From positions 186,001 through 250,000 of IMG/VR virus record IMGVR_UViG_3300030385_002649: DNA of 64,000 nt. One strand, 5' to 3'. The notes below the pieces were generated by a model, which saw only the letters and a list, made by a program, of their open reading frames with translations, searched no databases and had not been told where the DNA came from. The position numbers and the translations under genes were made by a program. Shown one piece after another: positions 17,126 through 49,906 of the stretch. The number at the start of each line of letters is the position of its first letter. Positions within the stretch are counted from its first letter, which is position 1.

Positions 17126-18580
17126 ATGTATAAAAGAGAGGCCGTAAAATGCGGCGTTTGCAACACAATCAAAACATTAGCATGCAGAAGCATCAAAAAA
17201 GCGATCAAAAAACACGGCGTGTATATGTGTCAATCATGTGTTATGAAACAACCAAAGTTTTCAAAAGCAAATAGCGATCGAGTTAAAAAACGATTTGAAA
17301 CACAAGAGTCTAGAGAAGAACTTAGTAAAAAAATCAAAGAATATTATGAAGACCCAGCCGCCAGAAAAAAGGCGTCAGCAAATAGCAAGAAATTGTGGCA
17401 GAATAGTGATTATAGAGCAACTCAAATAGCTTCAACGCAACAAAGTTGGCAAGATGAAGCTTATAAGAACAAAGTAACTGAAGGCGTAAAAAAAAGCTGG
17501 ACTGACGAAAGGAAAAGAAAACAGTCAGACATCACAAAAAAATTGTGGGAAGACGTCGATTACCAATTGAAACGAGACGCTGGGATGCGCAAAAGCTATA
17601 CTCCTTATCGTCGAAAACAATTATCATTACAATCAAAGAAATTGTGGCAAAATCCGAAATACCGATCTAAATTAGCCTCGTCTATGGTTGGCGTAACCAC
17701 TAGCGTGTTAGACAATACGATAATAAGTTTGGCGAAAAGGCTAGGCTACGAGGCAGAACCAATTGCTATTGGGCCGTGGACATTTGATGCATTGATCGAG
17801 CATAATAATAAGAAATTGCTAGTAGAGTGTCAAGGTGATTATTATCACAACAAACCAGAAAGAATGATTAGAGACAAACAAAAGCGCACATATTATGACA
17901 ATCACTTGTCGGACCAATATGATTTACTAATAATATGGGAACATGAATTCTATTGCATAGGGAGAATATCCGATTTATTAAAAAACCAATTCTATGAAAA
18001 AGTCAAACCAGTCTGTTTCAATCTAAGAGATCTGGTTATTGAAATTGTTGATCATAACATAGCGAAAAAATTCTATAACCAGTTTCATTACTTAAAAAAA
18101 TATCGAAGCGGCCCATTAAATATTGCGGCTAAATTGGATGGCGCAATAGTCGCTGTAATATCCTTCAGCAGCCCGACAAGAAAAGAAAGCCAAACTAGGC
18201 TTGGATTAGAAAACGGCGAATTGTTAGAGTTAGTCAGAATGTGTGTCAACCCGCAATTTCAAAACAAAAACCTGTTAAGTTTTTTGTTGTCTAAAACCGT
18301 TAAGACGATAAGATCTAACACTAAGGTCAAAGCCATAATAACGTTCGCAGACACAACGCTAGGACATACCGGAGCCGCTTATAAAGCCTCCAATTTCAAA
18401 TTCGACGGCGAGGCCAAACCAACATATTGGTACATCGACCAAAACGGATATTATAGACACAAAAAAACTGTTTGGGATCAAGCGAACAGGCTTGGGAAAA
18501 AAGAGATAGAATATGCCAATTATTGTAAATTGACTAAAGTTAAAGGCAAAAAACTTTTAAGATTTATCTACAGACTATAG
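17126..18580 (+). CDS. putative homing endonuclease: NUMOD-like repeats + Vsr/DUF559-like nuclease + Mom-like GNAT domain
   Basis: repeated SKKLWQ; D...LVECQGDYYH...IWEHE; FHYL...ELVRMC...ITFADTTLGHTGAAYKASNF; AT-rich and inverted. Confidence 0.75.
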   Translation: MYKREAVKCGVCNTIKTLACRSIKKAIKKHGVYMCQSCVMKQPKFSKANSDRVKKRFETQESREELSKKIKEYYEDPAARKKASANSKKLWQNSDYRATQIASTQQSWQDEAYKNKVTEGVKKSWTDERKRKQSDITKKLWEDVDYQLKRDAGMRKSYTPYRRKQLSLQSKKLWQNPKYRSKLASSMVGVTTSVLDNTIISLAKRLGYEAEPIAIGPWTFDALIEHNNKKLLVECQGDYYHNKPERMIRDKQKRTYYDNHLSDQYDLLIIWEHEFYCIGRISDLLKNQFYEKVKPVCFNLRDLVIEIVDHNIAKKFYNQFHYLKKYRSGPLNIAAKLDGAIVAVISFSSPTRKESQTRLGLENGELLELVRMCVNPQFQNKNLLSFLLSKTVKTIRSNTKVKAIITFADTTLGHTGAAYKASNFKFDGEAKPTYWYIDQNGYYRHKKTVWDQANRLGKKEIEYANYCKLTKVKGKKLLRFIYRL

Positions 18581-43724: not shown

Positions 43725-43796
43725 TCGAGAGAAAAACAAGGTGAGTGTGTTGTCAAATTGCATAAATGTGAAGTAACTCATCTTTTCACTTCTCGA
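43725..43796 (-). ncRNA. Y-RNA-like element 1 (minimal, no tRNA module)
   Basis: shared GAAGTGA-N-GAGTTACTTC...ACAC...TTTTCTC stem. Confidence 0.6.
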
Positions 43797-43798
43797 AA

Positions 43799-43871
43799 CC
43801 CCCACGACCGGACTTGAACCGGCAACCTTTCGCGTGACAGGCGAGTGCTCCTCCAATTGAGCTACGTGGGG
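43799..43871 (-). tRNA. tRNA-Asp(GTC)
   Basis: canonical cloverleaf. Confidence 0.9.
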
Positions 43872-43877
43872 TTAATA

Positions 43878-43929
43878 GTGATGCTTTATTCTTTCAGTCC
43901 TACGGAAGCATCGCCCAAACCAAGGACTA
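43878..43929 (-). ncRNA. putative H-type pseudoknot
   Basis: interleaved stems AGTCCT/AGGACT and GATGCTT/AAGCATC. Confidence 0.45.
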
Positions 43930-43935
43930 ATAAGA

Positions 43936-44010
43936 CAGGGGCGACAGGACTCGAACCTGCAAATTCTTCGGCTTTGGAAACCGCTGCCCTACCAATTGAG
44001 CTACACCCCT
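43936..44010 (-). tRNA. tRNA-Trp(CCA)
   Basis: canonical cloverleaf. Confidence 0.9.
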
Positions 44011-44013
44011 AAA

Positions 44014-44156
44014 ATGTGAGAGAAAAACGAGAAAAGGTGTTTTTCTAAAAAAACTCGCCCATGTAGTGGACGAGGTTGGATTCGAACCAACATAAATAGA
44101 TTATTAGTCTAGTGTGTTACCATTTGGAAGTATCTCTTCTCAATCACTTCTCACAT
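44014..44156 (-). ncRNA. Y-RNA-like element 2 (anticodon arm AAT + T arm + closed acceptor hairpin)
   Basis: shared stem; GTTGG-TTCGAAT-CCAAC; CTCGTCCA/TGGGCGAG. Confidence 0.65.
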
Positions 44157-44158
44157 AA

Positions 44159-44230
44159 CGGGCAGAGAGGGATTTGAACCCCCGACTCTTGGTTCTTCAA
44201 ACCAATGTTCTTCCGCTGAACTACCTGCCC
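44159..44230 (-). tRNA. tRNA-Phe(GAA)
   Basis: canonical cloverleaf. Confidence 0.85.
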
Positions 44231-44254
44231 AAATCAAATTGTCAATACACTAAA

Positions 44255-44280
44255 GACGGAGAAACCGGGCATGCCTGTCA
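44255..44280 (-). promoter_or_regulatory. TGACA-N17-CGTC promoter-like motif
   Basis: exact match, upstream of tRNA-Phe. Confidence 0.65.
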
Positions 44281-44287
44281 CTTTCTT

Positions 44288-44599
44288 CTAAGAGCTTTCT
44301 GGCGTCTTCTTCATCAAAGTGCTTCTCATTTTCCCAACTTCATCGACCAAACCGGAAAGGCCGCTCTTTTCAAGCTCTTTCGGCGCAGAAGACCCAGACT
44401 TAGCCGAATTGATAATGACCCAAGCCAACCGGCAATCATCATTTTTCAACTGCGCTCTTCCGAGTCGTTCGCCTTCCTCTTCTAACCAATTCAAAGCTTT
44501 TGACCAGTGAGCGTCAGTGTTTTCTAAGGCTTTCCAAACAAGCATTCTAACTTTTTGAACGTGCTTGGTAATATCATCGTGTAAGACATCTAGTTTCAT
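44288..44599 (-). CDS. hypothetical protein
   Basis: 103-aa ORF. Confidence 0.55.
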   Translation of the reverse strand: MKLDVLHDDITKHVQKVRMLVWKALENTDAHWSKALNWLEEEGERLGRAQLKNDDCRLAWVIINSAKSGSSAPKELEKSGLSGLVDEVGKMRSTLMKKTPESS

Positions 44600-44600
44600 A

Positions 44601-44996
44601 CTATACCTTTACTTCTTTCCTACCATGAGTTAAAACAATCATAGGGCGACCTACAAACGTCTCAGTCCAAGTCTTAGCCCAAGGGCCCCTAATAGTAAAG
44701 CACCAACTATCCCTATGTGCTAAGACCCTGTGATTTTTACTCTTCTTAGTCAGCTTTGGAATTAAAGAACGACGATACCAATGCATCTCGCCAGAAACGT
44801 CTTCTTCTATAATAGCACCAAACAAGAACCAAGTTAAGGCGTTGAAAGCATGGGTGTGAAAAGCTTCTCTTCCGCCCTTATTAAACTTGAGCAACATAAC
44901 GCTACACAGCCATTTAATTTCAAAAAGCACGTATGCGTCAACTGGCGATTCTGGCCCGCCGTCTTTAACCTTACAAAAAAATCTCATTATTCCCAT
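44601..44996 (-). CDS. cupin-like hypothetical phage protein
   Basis: KDGGPESPV, REAFHTHAF, H.V...W.FT.RGPW. Confidence 0.65.
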   Translation of the reverse strand: MGIMRFFCKVKDGGPESPVDAYVLFEIKWLCSVMLLKFNKGGREAFHTHAFNALTWFLFGAIIEEDVSGEMHWYRRSLIPKLTKKSKNHRVLAHRDSWCFTIRGPWAKTWTETFVGRPMIVLTHGRKEVKV

Positions 44997-46504
44997 TCAA
45001 TCGTAGCTGGTGGTTTTGAAGAAATGTCATAACAAACTCTGTTTATGCCACGTACTTCGTTACAAATCTGACTAGAGATCCTACCTAAAAGTTCGTAATC
45101 GAGCTTAGACCAATCGGCGGTCATACCGTCCGTAGCATCAACTGCTCTAACGACGCAAGTATATTCATAAGTCCTACCATCTCCCATCACTCCGACTGAT
45201 TTAGTAGGAAGAAGAACGCAGAAATACTGCCATGGTCTGGTTTCTTTTGGGATGGCGTCGATCTCTTTACGAACAATTTTGTCCGCAGCCCTAAGAATCT
45301 CAAGCTTCTTTTCACTTATAGCGCCTAAAACGCGAATCGACAATCCTGGGCCTGGAAAAGGCTGTCTCTCAACAAGATGATCTGGAAGACCTAATTTCCT
45401 ACCGATTTCTCTAGCTTCATCTTTAAAGAGACTCCTCAAAGGCTCGATCAATTCGAATCCAAGGTCTTCCGGGAGACCGCCAACATTATGGTGACTTTTA
45501 ATTGTTTTGCTCAGCCCATCGTCTGACGAACTCTCGATTACGTCTGGATAAAGCGTTCCTTGTGCCAAAAATTTGGCCCCATCAATCTTCAGAGCCTCTT
45601 CCTTAAAGACGTCAATAAAGGCGGCGCCTATGATCTTTCTTTTTGTTTCGGGGTCTTCTACACCGTCTAATTTGGTGAGGAAGCGGTCTCTTGCGTCAGC
45701 AACAATGAATCGGTCCCCAAAGATGGGTTTGAAAGCCGCAGTCACTTCCTCGACTTCTTCAGCCCGGAGCAAGCCATTGTCGACCATAATGCAGACCAAC
45801 TGATCTCCAACAGCCTCATTAACCATTAAGGCAGTAACTGCAGAATCAACTCCTCCAGAAAGCCCACAGATGACCTTGCTGTCGCCAACTCTTTCTTTAA
45901 TCTTAGCAATCTCTTGCTCGACGAAAGTCCCTTCAAATTTTAACTCCTCACAATCACATATACCAGCAAAATTAGCAAGAATTTGCCTACCGAACTGGGT
46001 GTGAGCCACTTCCGGATGGAACTGAATTCCATAAATGTCTTTTCTCTCATGTTTAATAGCTGCATAATGAGTCGATTCTGTCATGGCGATCATGTCGAAG
46101 CCTACAGGAGGCAATTCAACGCTGTCGCCATGAGACATCCAAACTTGAGAGGTTTCCGTCAGTCCGTTCCATAATGGAACTTTCGAAACCAATTGTAATT
46201 TAGCCTTGCCGTATTCTCTTTTGTCGGATTGGTCGACATAACCGCCAATCGTCTTACACAATACTTGCATTCCATAACAAATGCCGAGGATCGGAGTTCC
46301 AAGATTGAGAATTCCGTAATCAAACTCTGGAGCGTTCTCATCATAAACAGAAGATGGGCTTCCTGACAATACTATACCGTCGTAAGCACGCAGGTCTTCA
46401 ACTTTTATCGCATTAGAAACAATTTCGCATAGAACATTTAGCTCGCCAAATCGTCTCGCGATCAATTTTGTAAATTGTGAACCGTAATCAATAATCGCGA
46501 TCAT
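44987..46504 (-). CDS. guaA: GMP synthase (glutamine-hydrolysing)
   Basis: DYGSQF, GICYGMQ, HPE, SGGVDS, HHNVGG, SKPPATIEWE; GGAGG SD before ATG 46504. Confidence 0.97.
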   Translation of the reverse strand: MIAIIDYGSQFTKLIARRFGELNVLCEIVSNAIKVEDLRAYDGIVLSGSPSSVYDENAPEFDYGILNLGTPILGICYGMQVLCKTIGGYVDQSDKREYGKAKLQLVSKVPLWNGLTETSQVWMSHGDSVELPPVGFDMIAMTESTHYAAIKHERKDIYGIQFHPEVAHTQFGRQILANFAGICDCEELKFEGTFVEQEIAKIKERVGDSKVICGLSGGVDSAVTALMVNEAVGDQLVCIMVDNGLLRAEEVEEVTAAFKPIFGDRFIVADARDRFLTKLDGVEDPETKRKIIGAAFIDVFKEEALKIDGAKFLAQGTLYPDVIESSSDDGLSKTIKSHHNVGGLPEDLGFELIEPLRSLFKDEAREIGRKLGLPDHLVERQPFPGPGLSIRVLGAISEKKLEILRAADKIVRKEIDAIPKETRPWQYFCVLLPTKSVGVMGDGRTYEYTCVVRAVDATDGMTADWSKLDYELLGRISSQICNEVRGINRVCYDISSKPPATIEWE

Positions 46505-46816
46505 GCCGCCTCCAAAGGGGCTATCTACAAGTTGAAAGGATATATCCGATTGCTGCAAATCCAATAATTGCCACCATGACCATGACCATGACCATGATTA
46601 TTTGTATTTGCAATTTACTCGCTGCTTTCTTTAGACCATTTATCTAAAGTTGTTGAAAATTCTTTTTTATCGCCAAGAGTTTTTGTTATGAACTCGGCGG
46701 CGCCTTCAAGGCGTCGGTTATAAACTGAACACATCCCGCCATGATGAATAGCGAAATAAAGGTCTGCACGAGCTATTTCTAATGCTCGTATAACATCTTG
46801 TTCTTCTGTCATAATA

Positions 46817-46888
46817 TAGACCGGGAGGGACTCGAACCCACAACCCACGGCTTAAAAGGCCATTGCGCTACCATTGCGCCACCGATCC
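46817..46888 (-). tRNA. tRNA-Lys(TTT)
   Basis: canonical cloverleaf. Confidence 0.9.
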
Positions 46889-46892
46889 AAAA

Positions 46893-47032
46893 TATACAAG
46901 AGAAAAAGCAAAAGAGAAATGTTTCCTGCTCTACCGCTGAGCTATTTCGCCACGGATGGCGAAAGTAGGATTTGAACCCACGACCTGGCACTTAAATGAT
47001 GTGAAGTAACTCTTTCTATCACTTCTTGTATA
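46893..47032 (-). ncRNA. YrlA-like Y RNA (permuted T arm - closed acceptor - D arm)
   Basis: GTGGGTTCAAATCCTAC, TTTCGCCA/TGGCGAAA, TAGCTCAGCGGTAGAGC within the shared stem. Confidence 0.75.
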
Positions 47033-47090
47033 CTGCCGTTGGAAGAGTCGAACTCCCCACTAGGTATCCCCAGTGCCCACTTTAACGGCA
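47033..47090 (-). ncRNA. D-armless mini tRNA-like RNA
   Basis: TGCCGTT/AACGGCA, CACTGG/CTAGTG, GGGAG-TTCGACT-CTTCC. Confidence 0.55.
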
Positions 47091-47420
47091 AACCAAGTCC
47101 TCACTCGGTTAAAAATTGCGATAACTCATCATAAAAGGGGTGATCAACCAGCTTTTGCAACTTTTATCGCATACTATTCTATTTTCTTCCAACTTCTTCG
47201 AACCAAACCCTATTCTTCTTCGTGAAACTCCATCATCATTTTGATGAAATTAAGACAATCTGCGAAACTCTTGTTTCTTGCGGCCTCGGAGTCATTCCCA
47301 TGAGCTGCATATGTGTGATGCTCTGCCAAAACTCGATGGCGTTGTCTTTCGAACCACGTTCTCATTTTCTTTTTATCACCCACAAGAAGCTTCGGAAACT
47401 TTATTATCATTCTGATAAAA

Positions 47421-47517
47421 TACAATCGCAGCGGGATTTTCACCCGCATCTCAAGATTCATAATCAAGGATGTTCGCCCGCCCTGATCAAGGGCGGAATA
47501 TTACACCATACGATTGC
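47421..47517 (-). ncRNA. tRNA-like RNA (ATG loop) with a hairpin inserted in the D loop
   Basis: GCAATCG/CGATTGT; insert CCGCCCTTGATCAGGGCGG; T arm GCGGG/CCCGC. Confidence 0.5.
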
Positions 47518-47556
47518 TGAATTCCTAGACCTTAATCGATGCGGCCTAGTTCATCA

Positions 47557-47628
47557 CTCACCCCCCCGGACTTGCACCGAGAACCTTGACGTTAACAACG
47601 TCCTGCTCTACTATTGAGCTAGAGGCGA
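47557..47628 (-). tRNA. tRNA-Asn(GTT), divergent
   Basis: cloverleaf, T loop TGCAAGT. Confidence 0.75.
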
Positions 47629-47858
47629 ATATCTTTATTGGGTTCTCAGTCATTAATTTCATCTACCCAACACCAACTTCGTTGGATTTTAACGTATTTG
47701 CCTATCCTTGGTGTTCCCTCAGGAGGAACGTGTTCAGGACAGAATTCTTGTTTTTGCTTTATTTTGCGATTGTAAATTGACCAAGCTGCAGCGTTACGAC
47801 ATTTATGCGTTTCACATTTTCTAGGAAGTCTTTCCATTTCCATACAGTCGAACATAAA

Positions 47859-47930
47859 CTCCGACGGCTGGACTCGAACCAGCAACACTTCGCTTAACAG
47901 GCGAACACTCTACCATTGAGCTACGTCGGA
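47859..47930 (-). tRNA. tRNA-Asn(GTT)
   Basis: canonical cloverleaf. Confidence 0.9.
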
Positions 47931-47933
47931 AAA

Positions 47934-48063
47934 TCGTGAGGAGAAAAGTGAAAAAGTGTTTGCAAAGTCTGCGGTTTTGACGCCACAACCTTCAGTTTTT
48001 CAGACTGACGCTCTACATTGAGCTAAAATTTTGGAAGTAACTCTTTCGGTCACTTCCTCACGA
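47934..48063 (-). ncRNA. Y-RNA-like element 4 (D arm + GAA anticodon arm + T arm)
   Basis: shared stem; TCAGT-CTGAAAA-ACTGA. Confidence 0.65.
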
Positions 48064-48064
48064 A

Positions 48065-48145
48065 TCGAGAAGGTAGGATTCGAACCCACAAAGCTTAAAG
48101 CACCCGCTGTACAACCGGGCCGGTTACCAAAACCGAAACTTCTCG
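48065..48145 (-). tRNA. atypical tRNA-Tyr(GTA) with C1-G72
   Basis: CGAGAAG/CTTCTCG; loop TTGTACA. Confidence 0.6.
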
Positions 48146-48168
48146 TTAAAACTGAAATACGTAACAAA

Positions 48169-48286
48169 TGAGCAAAAGGGGGTGGGACAGACTTGATGTT
48201 CTCCTAGCCGAAGCGTGGGACAGACTTGATGTTCTCCTTGGCAAACCGTGGGACAGACTTGATGTTCTCCTACCCCCTTTTGCTCA
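48169..48286. repeat. three 24-nt direct repeats (33-nt period) enclosed by a 15-bp inverted repeat
   Basis: GTGGGACAGACTTGATGTTCTCCT at 48182, 48215 and 48248. Confidence 0.95.
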
Positions 48287-48290
48287 CTCA

Positions 48291-48857
48291 TTACACAATA
48301 TGCGGATGAAGCAGAATCCTAATAGACTCCCTAATCCCAGCCGCAACATACTCAAAATTGACCGCCGTAGCAATCGTGATCGTAGTTAGAGGGCTTCTTT
48401 CGCCAGTGTCAGGATCCCTAACACCAAGCTTAAAATAATTCCTCAAATTCGTATTACTCCCGACCCTACTAATAGGGTTGATCCACCTATCTTCAACAGT
48501 CCAACTAGTCGAGCCATTAGCCAACTGTCTCAATGGACGGTACCGTTTACCCTTCCTGTCACTATAAACAGTGCCGCGAGAAGAATGAACGCCGCGAGCC
48601 TTCTTAATAAACTTATAAATCTCAACTTGTAAGCCAGCCGGATTGTCAAAATAAACGATGCCAGTCGTCCCATTGATTCCAATAATTACTGGAGGAAGAA
48701 GACCTCCACCGCTAACCCCATCAGCACCGGTTGGACCAGTTGGCCCCGTAGCACCAAAACCTCCGCCATCAACCCCTTGGATGATAACTCTTTCGATTGG
48801 GCCATTAACAAAAGGCTCATCTCTTACAATTTGCAAGTTTCTGATTTTATTGCTCAT
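48291..48857 (-). CDS. collagen-motif virion protein
   Basis: GATGPTGPTGADG. Confidence 0.6.
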   Translation of the reverse strand: MSNKIRNLQIVRDEPFVNGPIERVIIQGVDGGGFGATGPTGPTGADGVSGGGLLPPVIIGINGTTGIVYFDNPAGLQVEIYKFIKKARGVHSSRGTVYSDRKGKRYRPLRQLANGSTSWTVEDRWINPISRVGSNTNLRNYFKLGVRDPDTGERSPLTTITIATAVNFEYVAAGIRESIRILLHPHIV

Positions 48858-49041
48858 AATTTATTTATGCTTGGCCCGGCGGATCTGGATCGTGGGATTT
48901 GTGCCATAATTTCCAAGCGAGGACTTGGTAGCTGTGCCAACATTTGTGGAAACCAGACCCATAAACCTTGTCACACCGACAATTTTTATAGACACCCAAA
49001 GTGTTAGTCTTTCTCTAATTTTGAAAACTTATTTTGTAGGA

Positions 49042-49168
49042 TGATGAGAGAACTCTTGAAAAACCGTTAGTGTCAATTATGGGACTTGAACCCACAACAT
49101 GCAGCTTTGAAGGCTATTACTCTACCATTGAGTTAAATTGAAGTAAGTCTTTCTATCACTTCTCATCA
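49042..49168 (-). ncRNA. Y-RNA-like element 5 carrying a near-complete tRNA body with TCA anticodon
   Basis: shared stem; TCAATT/AATTGA, D arm, loop CTTCAAA, GTGGG-TTCAAGT-CCCAT. Confidence 0.65.
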
Positions 49169-49169
49169 A

Positions 49170-49263
49170 TGAATGGCAAAGGGATCGCACCTCTGTCCGA
49201 CAACCCGGGAAACATGAACAAGCTCCGCTGCGTTGGGTTGTCGTCCCCCTATGGGGCCCATTC
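49170..49263 (-). ncRNA. tRNA-like RNA with extended anticodon arm
   Basis: GAATGG/CCATTC, CCCC/GGGG, CGACAACCC/GGGTTGTCG, T-like arm. Confidence 0.5.
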
Positions 49264-49266
49264 TAA

Positions 49267-49830
49267 TCATTTTCTTGAAAACGTTTTGGTCTGAGAATGG
49301 CAATTAGGGCATAACCACCTCAAGTTTTCTAACCTATTATCGTTATTCTTCCCATTAATATGATCAATTTGAAGAATTAATGGTTTCCCATTATGAACAT
49401 CATCGCATTGACATGTCGAACAATGCGATGATCTTTGTTTCTTTTTAAATCTTCGTCTTAATGTAATCTGTGCTACTTTGCTATTTTCGCAAAACACTTG
49501 CCCGTCGGATTTTTTATTATCACGATTAAGAGCTTCGATAGCAACAATGTCGCCTGCAAAGTGATCGATATCAAGCTTAAGTCTTTTTATGTGTTTTTTG
49601 ATGCTTGTCCAATTATTCCCTCTTGCAGATAATCCCAATTTTGTAAGCAATTCAGTATAACATCGGCTTCCTTTAACGTTAATCTTTAACTGTTCATCTG
49701 TCCAAGTTCGATTGAATAGACCATAAGGGGAACAATCAAAACAATATCTGCGACTAGTAGCCGATTTCCATTTTCCATCAATTTTTATATGAGTTTTAAA
49801 TTCTTGCTTACAACCTTTACAAATCTTCAT
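49267..49830 (-). CDS. HNH endonuclease
   Basis: LQIDHINGKNNDNRLENLRWLCPNCH; starts directly after tRNA-Pro. Confidence 0.9.
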   Translation of the reverse strand: MKICKGCKQEFKTHIKIDGKWKSATSRRYCFDCSPYGLFNRTWTDEQLKINVKGSRCYTELLTKLGLSARGNNWTSIKKHIKRLKLDIDHFAGDIVAIEALNRDNKKSDGQVFCENSKVAQITLRRRFKKKQRSSHCSTCQCDDVHNGKPLILQIDHINGKNNDNRLENLRWLCPNCHSQTKTFSRK

Positions 49831-49831
49831 A

Positions 49832-49906
49832 TCAGAGCGGTGAGATTCGAACTCACGATCTCGACATCCCAAATGTCGCGCCTTGGCCAGACTAGGCTAC
49901 GCTCTG
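49832..49906 (-). tRNA. tRNA-Pro(TGG)
   Basis: canonical cloverleaf. Confidence 0.9.

What the first reader, a model, noticed from the sequence alone, without database searches (positions are those of the whole stretch)
43725..49168. Family of five Y-RNA-like elements with one conserved stem and swappable tRNA modules
Seen: five dispersed elements (43725, 44014, 46893, 47934, 49042) share a terminal stem, GAAGTGA-N-GA(G/C)(T/A)TACTTC and a pyrimidine-rich 3' strand. Cargo differs: none; anticodon(AAT)+T+closed acceptor; permuted T-acceptor-D; D+anticodon(GAA)+T; near-complete tRNA(TCA). Known: the permuted T-acceptor-D layout is that of bacterial YrlA RNAs, which bind Ro60/Rsr. Inference: a modular repertoire of Ro60-tethered tRNA mimics presenting different faces, including anticodon arms that canonical YrlA lacks. 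No TROVE gene lies in this window.
Basis: partly seen in the sequence, partly recalled or inferred. Interest (0 to 1): 0.85.

Follow-up and report, generated by a model that had tools for sequence, protein, structure and literature searches.

The report
Y-RNA-like family in phage tRNA array
A 371-kb marine phage carries, inside its tRNA gene cluster, five related small structured RNAs that share one conserved closing stem but enclose different tRNA look-alikes; they resemble bacterial Y RNAs, but their protein partner could not be found.

Summary
Five minus-strand elements share GA-AGUGA-N(9-11)-(U/A)UACUUC: 5 matches against 0.05 expected by chance.

The conserved structure is not a local hairpin. 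It is a 5'/3' closing stem (S1), then an internal loop (AGUGA opposite NUUUUUC), then a second helix (S2). All 40 S1 pairs are Watson-Crick, with different sequences in each copy.

The enclosed modules differ:
- E1: none.
- E2: hairpin, T arm and closed acceptor.
- E3: permuted T, closed acceptor and D.
- E4: a degenerate cloverleaf with anticodon GAA.
- E5: a good tRNA with anticodon UCA.

E3 has the full YrlA layout. It scores 31.6 bits on Rfam YrlA, and the genuine Ro60-adjacent YrlA of phage Bxz1 scores 32.5. E1-E4 sit 0-4 nt from flanking tRNAs or tRNA-like elements, which suggests excision by tRNA-processing enzymes.

The link to Ro60 is not supported. The CGAA-type binding motif is absent. 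A TROVE profile finds no gene in about 137 kb of the 371-kb genome; the rest is unexamined. No RNA data were listed.

Verdict: a new variant of a known kind (phage Y-RNA-like RNAs) with an unknown partner. The main rival reading is RNase III-type processing stalks or caged pre-tRNAs.

The parts
43725..43796 (-). E1, 72 nt. S1 is UCGAGA/UCUCGA. AGUGA is at 43786-43790. S2 is AAGAUGAG/CUCACCUU. UUACUUC is at 43770-43776. There is only a 24-nt loop and no tRNA module. It lies between tRNA-Asp (3' end 43799) and tRNA-Tyr (5' end 43720).
44014..44156 (-). E2, 143 nt. S1 is AUGUGAGA/UCUCACAU and S2 is GAGAAGAG/CUUUUCUC. The cargo holds a hairpin with a 7-nt loop CUAAUAA, the T arm GUUGG-UUCGAAU-CCAAC, and a closed acceptor-like hairpin CUCGUCCA-CUACA-UGGGCGAG followed by U7. 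There is no proper D arm. It lies between tRNA-Phe and tRNA-Trp.
   Evidence: (tRNA model 8-63, 23.8 bits)
46893..47032 (-). E3, 140 nt, the YrlA-type member. S1 is UAUACAAGA/UCUUGUAUA and S2 is GAAAGAG/CUCUUUU. After UUAC come a V hairpin, the T arm GUGGG-UUCAAAU-CCUAC, the closed acceptor hairpin UUUCGCC-AUCC-GGCGAAA, a UA linker, and the D arm GCUC-AGCGGUA-GAGC. It lies between a mini tRNA-like helix (47036-47105) and tRNA-Lys(UUU).
   Evidence: Rfam YrlA 31.6 bits, model 1-114; R1 52.5 bits, model 1-171
47934..48063 (-). E4, 130 nt. S1 is UCGUGAGGA/UCCUCACGA and S2 is GAAAGAG/CUUUUUC. The cargo is an unpermuted, degenerate cloverleaf at 47963-48032 with anticodon GAA, an acceptor stem with 6 of 7 pairs, the D loop AAUGUA without GG, and an 8-nt T loop. 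It lies between a tRNA-Tyr-like gene (48065-48145) and tRNA-Asn.
   Evidence: (tRNA 48.3 bits)
49042..49168 (-). E5, 127 nt. S1 is UGAUGAGA/UCUCAUCA and S2 is GAAAGACU/GGUUUUUC. The cargo is a well-formed tRNA at 49070-49142 with anticodon UCA (opal-suppressor type), a U1-C72 mismatch and no encoded CCA. Its acceptor 5' strand overlaps the last 3 nt of UUACUUC. It is not flanked by tRNAs; an HNH endonuclease ORF lies just upstream.
   Evidence: (tRNA 57.6 bits)
47036..47105 (-). Mini tRNA-like element directly abutting the 5' end of E3: acceptor stem UGCCGUU/AACGGCA plus T arm GGGAG-UUCGACU-CUUCC, with about 25 nt in between. It is a possible processing handle.
   Evidence: read from the sequence; not scored by any model
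48065..48145 (-). Unannotated tRNA-Tyr(GUA)-like gene with a long variable arm. Its 3' end lies 1 nt from the 5' end of E4.
   Evidence: Rfam tRNA 28.9 bits, gathering score 29

Best explanation
The five elements are paralogous small structured non-coding RNAs of 72-143 nt with the modular architecture of Y RNAs. They are transcribed with the phage's minus-strand tRNA array.

Each consists of the following parts, in order:
- A closing helix S1 formed by its 5' and 3' ends.
- A conserved internal loop, 5'-AGUGA opposite 3'-NUUUUUC.
- A second helix S2.
- A conserved junction, (U/A)UACUUC on one side and AAC(A) on the other.
- A variable distal module.

The invariant stem and loop is most likely the docking site for one common protein: a Ro60/Rsr-like protein of the phage or host, or an unidentified one. 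The distal module differs in each copy. It is empty in E1, a permuted YrlA-type tRNA mimic in E3 and partly in E2, and an unpermuted cloverleaf in E4 and E5. It would present a different tRNA-like face to tRNA-binding enzymes, or act as a decoy.

E1-E4 are probably released by the enzymes that mature the flanking tRNAs: RNase P at the 5' end of the downstream tRNA, and RNase Z or trimming at the 3' end of the upstream one.

Shown: the family, the covarying stems, the YrlA layout of E3 and the tight tRNA flanks. Inferred: transcription, processing, protein binding and function.
For: - Five copies against 0.05 expected by chance.
- All 40 S1 pairs are Watson-Crick, although S1 positions 3-8 differ between copies. 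Cognate 5'/3' strands pair 100%; non-cognate combinations pair 44-55%.
- S2 shows compensatory changes: GAG/CUC in E3 and E4 against GACU/GGU in E5, and A-U against U-A in E1.
- S2 contains G-U pairs in four of the five elements. These would be A-C mismatches on the other strand, so the constraint acts on the minus-strand RNA.
- ViennaRNA places S1 and S2 in or within 1.4 kcal/mol of the minimum-free-energy structure. Pair probabilities are 0.88-0.99 in E1, E2 and E5.
- E3 matches Rfam YrlA over the whole model (31.6 bits, E = 6e-4 for the 6-kb region). The control Bxz1 YrlA next to the Ro60 gene gp220 scores 32.5.
- E3 is the best window hit of a model built from 50 TROVE-linked phage YrlAs. 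Both stems, GUUA, and the V, T, AS and D arms all align.
- E3 has the UA kink and the UA linker between the acceptor stem and the D stem, both described for YrlA.
- Canonical phage YrlAs have the same plan of closing stem, internal loop and second stem, and often occur as 2-3 tandem paralogs.
- Both the permuted and the unpermuted tRNA-like topology are known among bacterial Y RNAs, in YrlA and Yrn1 respectively.
- The elements abut tRNAs or tRNA-like helices with gaps of 0-4 nt.
Against: - The Ro60-binding signature (GNCGAAN0-1G, 'CGAA') is absent. Every TROVE-linked YrlA I examined keeps a CCGRA-like motif plus GGUUAYC and a 3' CAC..YGCC block, and none of about 170 TROVE loci carries the AGUGA/UUACUUC motif.
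- A TROVE profile finds no gene in the window, in 10 kb to its left or in about 63 kb to its right. Canonical YrlAs are adjacent to Ro60.
- The Rfam score is below the gathering score.
- Tandem tRNAs score almost as high as E3 on the phage YrlA model (49.4 bits), so the score alone does not discriminate.
- E5 holds an apparently functional tRNA, which a tethering RNA does not need.
- There is no expression evidence.
- No homologues were found outside this one phage population, so all covariation comes from five paralogs.
Confidence: 0.5

Rival explanations
1. Processing stalks, or caged pre-tRNAs. On this reading S1, the internal loop and S2 form a double-stranded processing signal of about 20-25 bp. 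It resembles the paralogous RNase III sites of phage T7 or the stems that flank rRNAs (comparison from my own knowledge). A host or phage double-strand RNase would cleave in the conserved internal loop. This would separate tRNA sub-clusters and release, or delay the release of, the enclosed unusual tRNAs: the opal-suppressor-type tRNA(UCA) in E5 and the tRNA(GAA)-like cargo in E4. Pairing of leader with trailer would keep the tRNA inactive until it is cut.
For: - The stem-loop-stem geometry and a conserved internal loop with covarying stems are also what a family of RNase III sites looks like.
- E5 and E4 contain full-length tRNA matches of 57.6 and 48.3 bits whose acceptor stems sit directly on the stalk.
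- No Ro60 motif and no TROVE gene were found.
- E1, with no cargo, would be a plain hairpin-type site.
Against: - E3 and E2 enclose permuted, closed-acceptor modules that cannot become tRNAs, yet keep an intact T/D elbow. That implies selection on a stable tRNA-shaped RNA, not on a cleavage site.
- E1-E4 are already bounded by tRNAs 0-4 nt away, so RNase P and RNase Z would suffice to separate them.
- The invariant UUACUUC junction lies outside the duplex.
Confidence: 0.2
2. Selfish or decaying DNA. On this reading the elements are remnants of tRNA genes carried by small mobile cassettes, miniature inverted-repeat-like or spread by homing endonucleases. S1 would be the terminal inverted repeat. 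The RNAs would have no function of their own.
For: - There are five dispersed copies with inverted termini inside a tRNA array, a region where free-standing endonuclease genes are common.
- An HNH endonuclease ORF lies immediately upstream of E5.
- The cargo differs between copies, and parts of it are degenerate (E2, E4).
Against: - The terminal repeats differ in sequence between copies while staying perfectly complementary. Selection is therefore on pairing, not on a transposase recognition sequence.
- The G-U pairs in S2 work on one strand only.
- The internal motifs are invariant while the termini vary, the reverse of what is seen in inverted-repeat elements.
- I saw no flanking direct duplications.
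- The cargo modules are not recent copies of the phage's own tRNAs.
Confidence: 0.08
3. Ordinary inter-tRNA spacers whose similarity reflects recent duplication of tRNA-plus-spacer units, with no selected structure.
For: - The 5' modules of E3 and E5 are nearly identical.
- All evidence comes from paralogs within one genome.
Against: - The flanking tRNAs differ in identity: Asp/Tyr, Phe/Trp, Lys, Tyr-like/Asn.
- The cargo is unrelated between copies.
- S1 has diverged at six positions with every change compensated.
- E2, E3 and E4 fold better than shuffled sequence, with z-scores of -4.5, -2.7 and -3.3.
Confidence: 0.03

Closest known systems
YrlA (Rfam RF02553), the tRNA-like bacterial and phage Y RNA bound by Ro60/Rsr. 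Examples are S. Typhimurium and M. smegmatis YrlA and the YrlAs of Bxz1/ET08-type mycobacteriophages.
   Same: All five elements have a 5'/3' closing stem, an internal loop and a second stem leading to a distal module. In E3 the module is the permuted T arm, closed acceptor hairpin, UA linker and D arm, preceded by a V hairpin and UUA(C). The score is comparable to that of a bona fide phage YrlA. YrlAs occur as several paralogs per locus and sometimes next to tRNAs.
   Different: There is no GNCGAAN0-1G/CGAA motif; AGUGA and UUACUUC are conserved instead. The elements are not next to a Ro60 gene: none was found in about 137 kb. They sit inside a tRNA array, bounded by tRNAs. Only one or two of the five have the YrlA-type module.
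Deinococcus radiodurans Yrn1, a Y RNA with T and D arms in the unpermuted order that tethers Rsr to PNPase.
   Same: E4 and E5 have the D arm, anticodon-type arm and T arm in the normal tRNA order, mounted on a Y-type stem. That is the orientation described for Yrn1 as opposed to YrlA.
   Different: E4 and E5 also retain an acceptor stem and a true 7-nt anticodon loop. E5 scores as a normal tRNA. I could make no sequence comparison with Yrn1.
YrlB, and Yrl1/Yrl2 of Thermus phage phiLo: short Y RNAs without a tRNA-like domain.
   Same: E1 is stem, internal loop, stem and a small loop only, like the short partners that accompany YrlA.
   Different: Those RNAs carry the CGAA bulge and lie beside the Ro60 gene. 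E1 does neither.
Phage T4 stable RNAs C and D (species 1 and 2), encoded in the T4 tRNA gene cluster. This comparison rests on my own knowledge and was not tested here.
   Same: They are small stable non-tRNA RNAs co-transcribed with, and processed out of, a phage tRNA cluster. Their function is still unknown.
RNase III processing signals of phage T7 and the flanking stems of rRNA. This comparison rests on my own knowledge.
   Same: They are paralogous stem, internal loop, stem elements with a conserved loop and covarying stems that punctuate a polycistronic transcript.
   Different: Those elements do not enclose tRNA-shaped modules, and they separate mRNAs or rRNAs rather than tRNAs.

Membership tests
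YrlA (RF02553) | tRNA-like effector domain: T arm, closed acceptor-like hairpin, UA linker and D arm in permuted order | tested here: met
   Met for E3 only (features as described). E2 has the T arm and closed acceptor but no D arm. E1, E4 and E5 do not have this layout.
YrlA (RF02553) | Score at or above Rfam's gathering threshold of 69 bits | tested here: not met
   E3 scores 31.6 bits. The control, Bxz1 YrlA beside the Ro60 gene, also fails at 32.5 bits, so the threshold is too strict for phage members.
YrlA (RF02553) | 5' and 3' ends pair into a stem interrupted by an internal loop or bulge | tested here: met
   S1, internal loop and S2 are present in all five, with covariation. The plan matches the consensus of 50 TROVE-linked phage YrlAs.
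YrlA (RF02553) | Conserved 5'-strand motif GNCGAAN0-1G ('CGAA') thought to contact Ro60 | tested here: not met
   The elements have (A/G)GAAG followed by UGA, and the C is missing in all five. TROVE-linked YrlAs, including AT-rich ones, nearly all keep a CCGRA-type motif with a C immediately 5' of the purines; the main exception is one group of loci (L038, L084) that has GCAGGAC or GCAGAAC.
YrlA (RF02553) | Encoded next to, and on the same strand as, a Ro60/TROVE gene | tested here: not met
   A TROVE profile gives no hit in the window, in 10 kb to the left or in about 63.5 kb to the right. About 63% of the 370,804-bp contig could not be examined.
YrlA (RF02553) | Conserved UA 'kink' after the second stem (GGUUAYC) | tested here: inconclusive
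   GUUAC or CUUAC follows S2 in four of the five elements and AUAC in E2. The position is the same as UUAYC in canonical YrlAs, but the match is short.
YrlA (RF02553) | Binds Ro60/Rsr | not testable with these tools
   This needs a pull-down or a gel-shift assay.
tRNA (RF00005) | Full cloverleaf scoring above the gathering score of 29 bits | tested here: met
   The E5 cargo scores 57.6 bits and the E4 cargo 48.3 bits. The E2 cargo scores 23.8 bits (partial match) and the best tRNA alignment over E3 scores 18.1 bits; both are below the threshold. E4 lacks the GG of the D loop and has an 8-nt T loop (read).
RNase III-type processing stalk | About two helical turns of duplex with an internal loop; cleavage by RNase III | not testable with these tools
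   The geometry is compatible. Cleavage needs an experiment.

The most novel reading that the evidence does not exclude
A phage-encoded 'plug-in' ribonucleoprotein scaffold. One conserved stem (AGUGA/UUUUUC loop plus the UUACUUC junction) would be recognised by a single protein that is not a canonical Ro60. Evolution would have mounted interchangeable tRNA bodies on it: permuted mimics, anticodon-bearing decoys, and a stem-caged opal-suppressor tRNA. The phage could then bait or titrate host tRNA-targeting nucleases and tRNA enzymes, or release a suppressor tRNA on cue. This would be a Y-RNA-like system that is independent of Ro60 and embedded in a tRNA operon.
Probability: 0.2. Interest if true: 0.85.

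Novelty: new variant of a known kind. Interest (0 to 1): 0.62.

Why it matters
Y RNAs are understood as two-module adaptors: a Ro60-binding stem plus an effector-binding module. For the tRNA-like YrlA class the effector is still unknown. This phage keeps one stem constant and varies the tRNA-like module five ways, including both topologies known from separate bacterial lineages. It is a natural experiment on what the tRNA-like module is for.

If the partner is Ro60, this widens the sequence range of Ro60-binding sites and shows Y RNAs being matured as part of a tRNA operon. If it is not, it defines a new RNA-protein system in huge phages.

The stem-enclosed tRNA(UCA) also raises the possibility of regulated release of a suppressor tRNA in a phage that uses the standard genetic code.

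Tried and rejected
- **Local hairpin GAAGUGA/UUACUUC as the conserved stem.** Rejected in favour of long-range S1 and S2. Its pair probability is about 0 in E1, E2 and E5, it costs 2-6 kcal/mol in those, and it shows no covariation. E4 stays ambiguous (hairpin 0.16, S2 0.26) and E3 was not evaluated by that script. It could still form in transcripts that stop at the terminator-like hairpin in E2.
- **Self-cleaving ribozymes and other Rfam families.** Nothing scores at E <= 10 apart from tRNA and YrlA. The UGAUGAG...GAAA in E5 is not shared by the other copies.
- **More copies in the window.** There are none. T-AS-D-like hits of model R1 at 31.0-31.5 kb turned out to be tandem tRNAs with insertions.
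- **Homologues elsewhere.** A 17-base motif scan of IMG/VR found only this contig plus two hits in coding sequence. The scan of 185,579 GTDB genomes gave 15 hits, close to my own rough chance estimate (fewer than about 20). None has the complementary closing strand in the right place, and the one I read through (L186) lies in the 3' end of a short ORF.
- **GuaA-anchored locus searches.** In IMG/VR these gave the source contig and two distant loci without these elements.
- **TROVE on this contig through the search for related loci.** There are 569 and 355 TROVE loci in IMG/VR and only the best 80 are listed each time. The contig is not among them, so the result is uninformative.
- **Walking the genome with the look-up of encoding contigs.** This reached about 176,000-313,500 of the contig. 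It found baseplate and replication genes, glycosyltransferases and large unknown proteins, but no TROVE, no further tRNAs and no further elements.
- **A genome-wide repeated 14-mer to fetch the rest of the contig.** None exists.
- **RNA-seq evidence.** No RNA run was listed; the DNA runs listed as holding the stretch are from one marine sample.
- **Cargo as recent copies of the phage's own tRNAs.** The similarity is only generic to tRNAs.
- **Neighbouring ORFs as RNA-binding partners.** No informative Pfam or PHROG hits.
- **Stop-codon recoding that would explain tRNA(UCA).** TGA ends 18 of 58 long ORFs, and no alternative code stands out.

Full report
**Source and context.** The window is bases 186,001-250,000 of IMG/VR contig IMGVR_UViG_3300030385_002649 (370,804 bp), judged from the 100% GuaA match and its coordinates. 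The same proteins occur on assemblies of a Tara Oceans marine metagenome. It is a myovirus-type huge phage with tail sheath and baseplate genes. It carries GMP synthase and IMP dehydrogenase. The standard genetic code appears to be in use. ARAGORN finds 29 tRNA genes, all on the minus strand, between 30.9 and 54.5 kb. Rfam adds a few that ARAGORN misses.

**The observation.** GAAGTGA-N(5-20)-TACTTC occurs five times, all on the minus strand, against 0.05 expected by chance. A profile of the 5' module finds these five and nothing else in the window. On the tRNA strand each element reads as follows:
- a 5' strand of closing helix S1,
- AGUGA,
- a purine-rich stretch,
- (U/A)UACUUC,
- variable cargo,
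- AAC(A),
- a pyrimidine-rich stretch,
- NUUUUUC,
- the 3' strand of S1.

The elements are E1 43725-43796, E2 44014-44156, E3 46893-47032, E4 47934-48063 and E5 49042-49168.

**Which structure is conserved.**
- S1 is 6-9 bp and all 40 pairs are Watson-Crick.
- The two innermost S1 pairs are invariant. Positions 3-8 differ between copies and every difference is compensated. Examples are UCGAGA/UCUCGA, AUGUGAGA/UCUCACAU, UAUACAAGA/UCUUGUAUA, UCGUGAGGA/UCCUCACGA and UGAUGAGA/UCUCAUCA.
- Cognate strands pair at 100% of the variable positions. Non-cognate combinations pair at 44-55%.
- The purine-rich stretch pairs with the distal pyrimidine block to form S2 (7-8 bp). S2 has two double compensatory changes. 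It also has G-U pairs in four elements, which would be mismatches on the plus strand.
- Between S1 and S2 lies a conserved internal region, AGUGA(N0-2) opposite NUUUUUC. In E5 the 3' side is AAGAGUUC.
- ViennaRNA puts S1 and S2 in the minimum-free-energy fold of E1, E2 and E5, and within 1.4 kcal/mol of it in E4. The local hairpin GAAGUGA/UUACUUC has pair probabilities of 0.00-0.16 and costs 2-6 kcal/mol in E1, E2 and E5 (0.6 in E4); the script did not evaluate E3.
- The shared module is therefore a stem, internal loop and stem formed by the two ends of the RNA. AGUGA and UUACUUC are invariant sequence blocks, which makes them candidate protein contacts.

**The cargo.**
- E1 has only a 24-nt loop.
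- E2 has a hairpin with a 7-nt loop (CUAAUAA), a canonical T arm and a closed 8-bp acceptor-like hairpin followed by U7. That hairpin also scores as an intrinsic terminator. There is no D arm.
- E3 has a V hairpin, T arm, closed acceptor hairpin, UA linker and D arm.
- E4 is an unpermuted cloverleaf with anticodon GAA (Rfam tRNA 48.3 bits), but its D and T loops are degenerate.
- E5 is a good tRNA with anticodon UCA (57.6 bits). Its acceptor stem sits directly on the junction.
- The modules are not recent copies of the phage's own tRNAs.

**Comparison with YrlA.**
- E3 matches Rfam YrlA over the whole model at 31.6 bits, below the gathering score of 69.
- As a control I fetched mycobacteriophage Bxz1. 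The YrlA upstream of its Ro60 homologue gp220 scores 32.5 bits, so a sub-threshold score is normal for phage members.
- From IMG/VR loci encoding TROVE proteins I extracted 50 non-redundant YrlAs. Their consensus is a covarying closing stem, then an internal loop carrying CCGRAG, then a second stem, GGUUAYC, and the V, T, AS and D arms, followed by UAAAC, the second-stem 3' strand, CAC..YGCC and the closing stem.
- A covariance model built from them ranks E3 first in the window (52.5 bits, full length), with both stems and GUUA aligned.
- Tandem tRNAs score nearly as well (49.4 bits). The argument for E3 therefore rests on its anatomy (closed acceptor hairpin, no anticodon arms), not on the score.
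- Published descriptions fit this anatomy. They report the UA kink after the stem, the UA between the acceptor and D stems, the lack of an anticodon loop, Y RNAs encoded next to tRNAs in some bacteria, and an opposite T/D orientation in Deinococcus Yrn1.
- E3 and partly E2 thus resemble YrlA, E4 and E5 have the Yrn1-type orientation, and E1 resembles the short YrlB or Yrl1/2 type.

**What does not fit Ro60.**
- The proposed Ro60 contact motif (GNCGAAN0-1G, 'CGAA') is absent. The elements have (A/G)GAAGUGA.
- Nearly all TROVE-linked YrlAs I read, including AT-rich ones, keep a CCGRA-type motif with a C immediately 5' of the purines; one group of loci (L038, L084) has GCAGGAC or GCAGAAC instead. 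None of about 170 TROVE loci contains the AGUGA/UUACUUC module.
- A TROVE profile finds nothing in the window. It also finds nothing in the stretches I could reach by walking: 10 kb to the left and about 63.5 kb to the right, which hold baseplate genes, DNA polymerase III, RecA, DnaB, gp32, glycosyltransferases and large unknown proteins.
- That covers about 37% of the contig. The remainder and the unknown host are untested.
- No neighbouring ORF has an RNA-related annotation.

**Processing.** E1-E4 are bounded by tRNAs or tRNA-like helices. tRNA-Asp ends 2 nt before E1, and tRNA-Tyr starts 4 nt after it. E2 lies between tRNA-Phe and tRNA-Trp with gaps of 1 and 2-3 nt. E3 lies between a mini acceptor-plus-T helix and tRNA-Lys with gaps of 0-1 and 1-3 nt. 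E4 lies between a tRNA-Tyr-like gene and tRNA-Asn with gaps of 1 and 2-3 nt. The simplest inference is that RNase P and RNase Z-type cleavages of the neighbours define the ends, leaving short U-rich 3' tails. E5 is the exception: it has no tRNA flanks and lies downstream of an HNH endonuclease gene. No RNA data could be found to test any of this.

**Conservation outside this phage.** None was found. The motif is absent from IMG/VR apart from this contig and from one genome per GTDB species. GuaA-anchored searches found no close relative of the phage. All covariation therefore comes from the five paralogs.

**Verdict.** The elements are best read as a phage-specific, five-member family of Y-RNA-like scaffolds embedded in a tRNA operon. 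E3 is a structural YrlA. I do not file the family as YrlA members, because two defining features (the binding motif and linkage to Ro60) were tested and not met. The main rival is a family of RNase III-type processing stalks that cage unusual tRNAs. Selfish-DNA and plain-spacer readings are disfavoured by the pattern of covariation. I rate it a new variant of a known kind, of moderate to high interest, with the partner protein as the open question.

Noticed in passing
window 31283-31396 (-) and 31401-31493 (-): Two Rfam tRNA matches (45.0 and 30.6 bits) with 52-nt and 32-nt insertions in the anticodon-arm region. ARAGORN missed both. They may be tRNAs with intron-like inserts in a phage.
   Followed up: partly
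window 30974-31049 (-) and 31134-31190 (-): A tRNA with an 8-nt anticodon loop, which ARAGORN reports as anticodon 'taag' (a possible four-base decoder). Next to it is a tRNA-like element with a poor D arm (21 bits).
   Followed up: no
window 48168-48290: Three 33-bp tandem direct repeats (GTGGGACAGACTTGATGTTCTCCT...) bracketed by the inverted repeat AAAGGGGGT/ACCCCCTTTT, lying between E4 and the next ORF. The arrangement looks like iterons or an operator.
   Followed up: no
window 48065-48145 (-): A second tRNA-Tyr(GUA)-like gene with a long variable arm. It scores 28.9 bits, just under Rfam's cutoff, and ARAGORN does not call it.
   Followed up: partly
window 47036-47105 (-): A mini tRNA-like element, a 7-bp acceptor stem plus a T arm with only about 25 nt between them, directly abutting the 5' end of E3.
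   Followed up: no
window 44054-44074 (-): The closed acceptor hairpin of E2 followed by U7 scores as an intrinsic terminator. If it is used, transcripts would end before the 3' strand of E2's own stem.
   Followed up: no
window 49170-49266 (-) and 49267-49872 (-): An HNH endonuclease ORF immediately upstream of E5, separated from it by a long hairpin (GACAACCC...GGGUUGUC).
   Followed up: no
window 17126-18580 (+) and L278:16187-17461: Two Mom-family proteins (Pfam PF25680) in the same phage, suggesting DNA base modification.
   Followed up: no
TROVE loci L018, L023, L031, L036, L059, L072, L093 and others: Many IMG/VR phage contigs carry two or three tandem YrlA-type RNAs upstream of the Ro60 gene. 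At least 569 viral loci encode a TROVE protein, several of them on contigs longer than 300 kb.
   Followed up: partly
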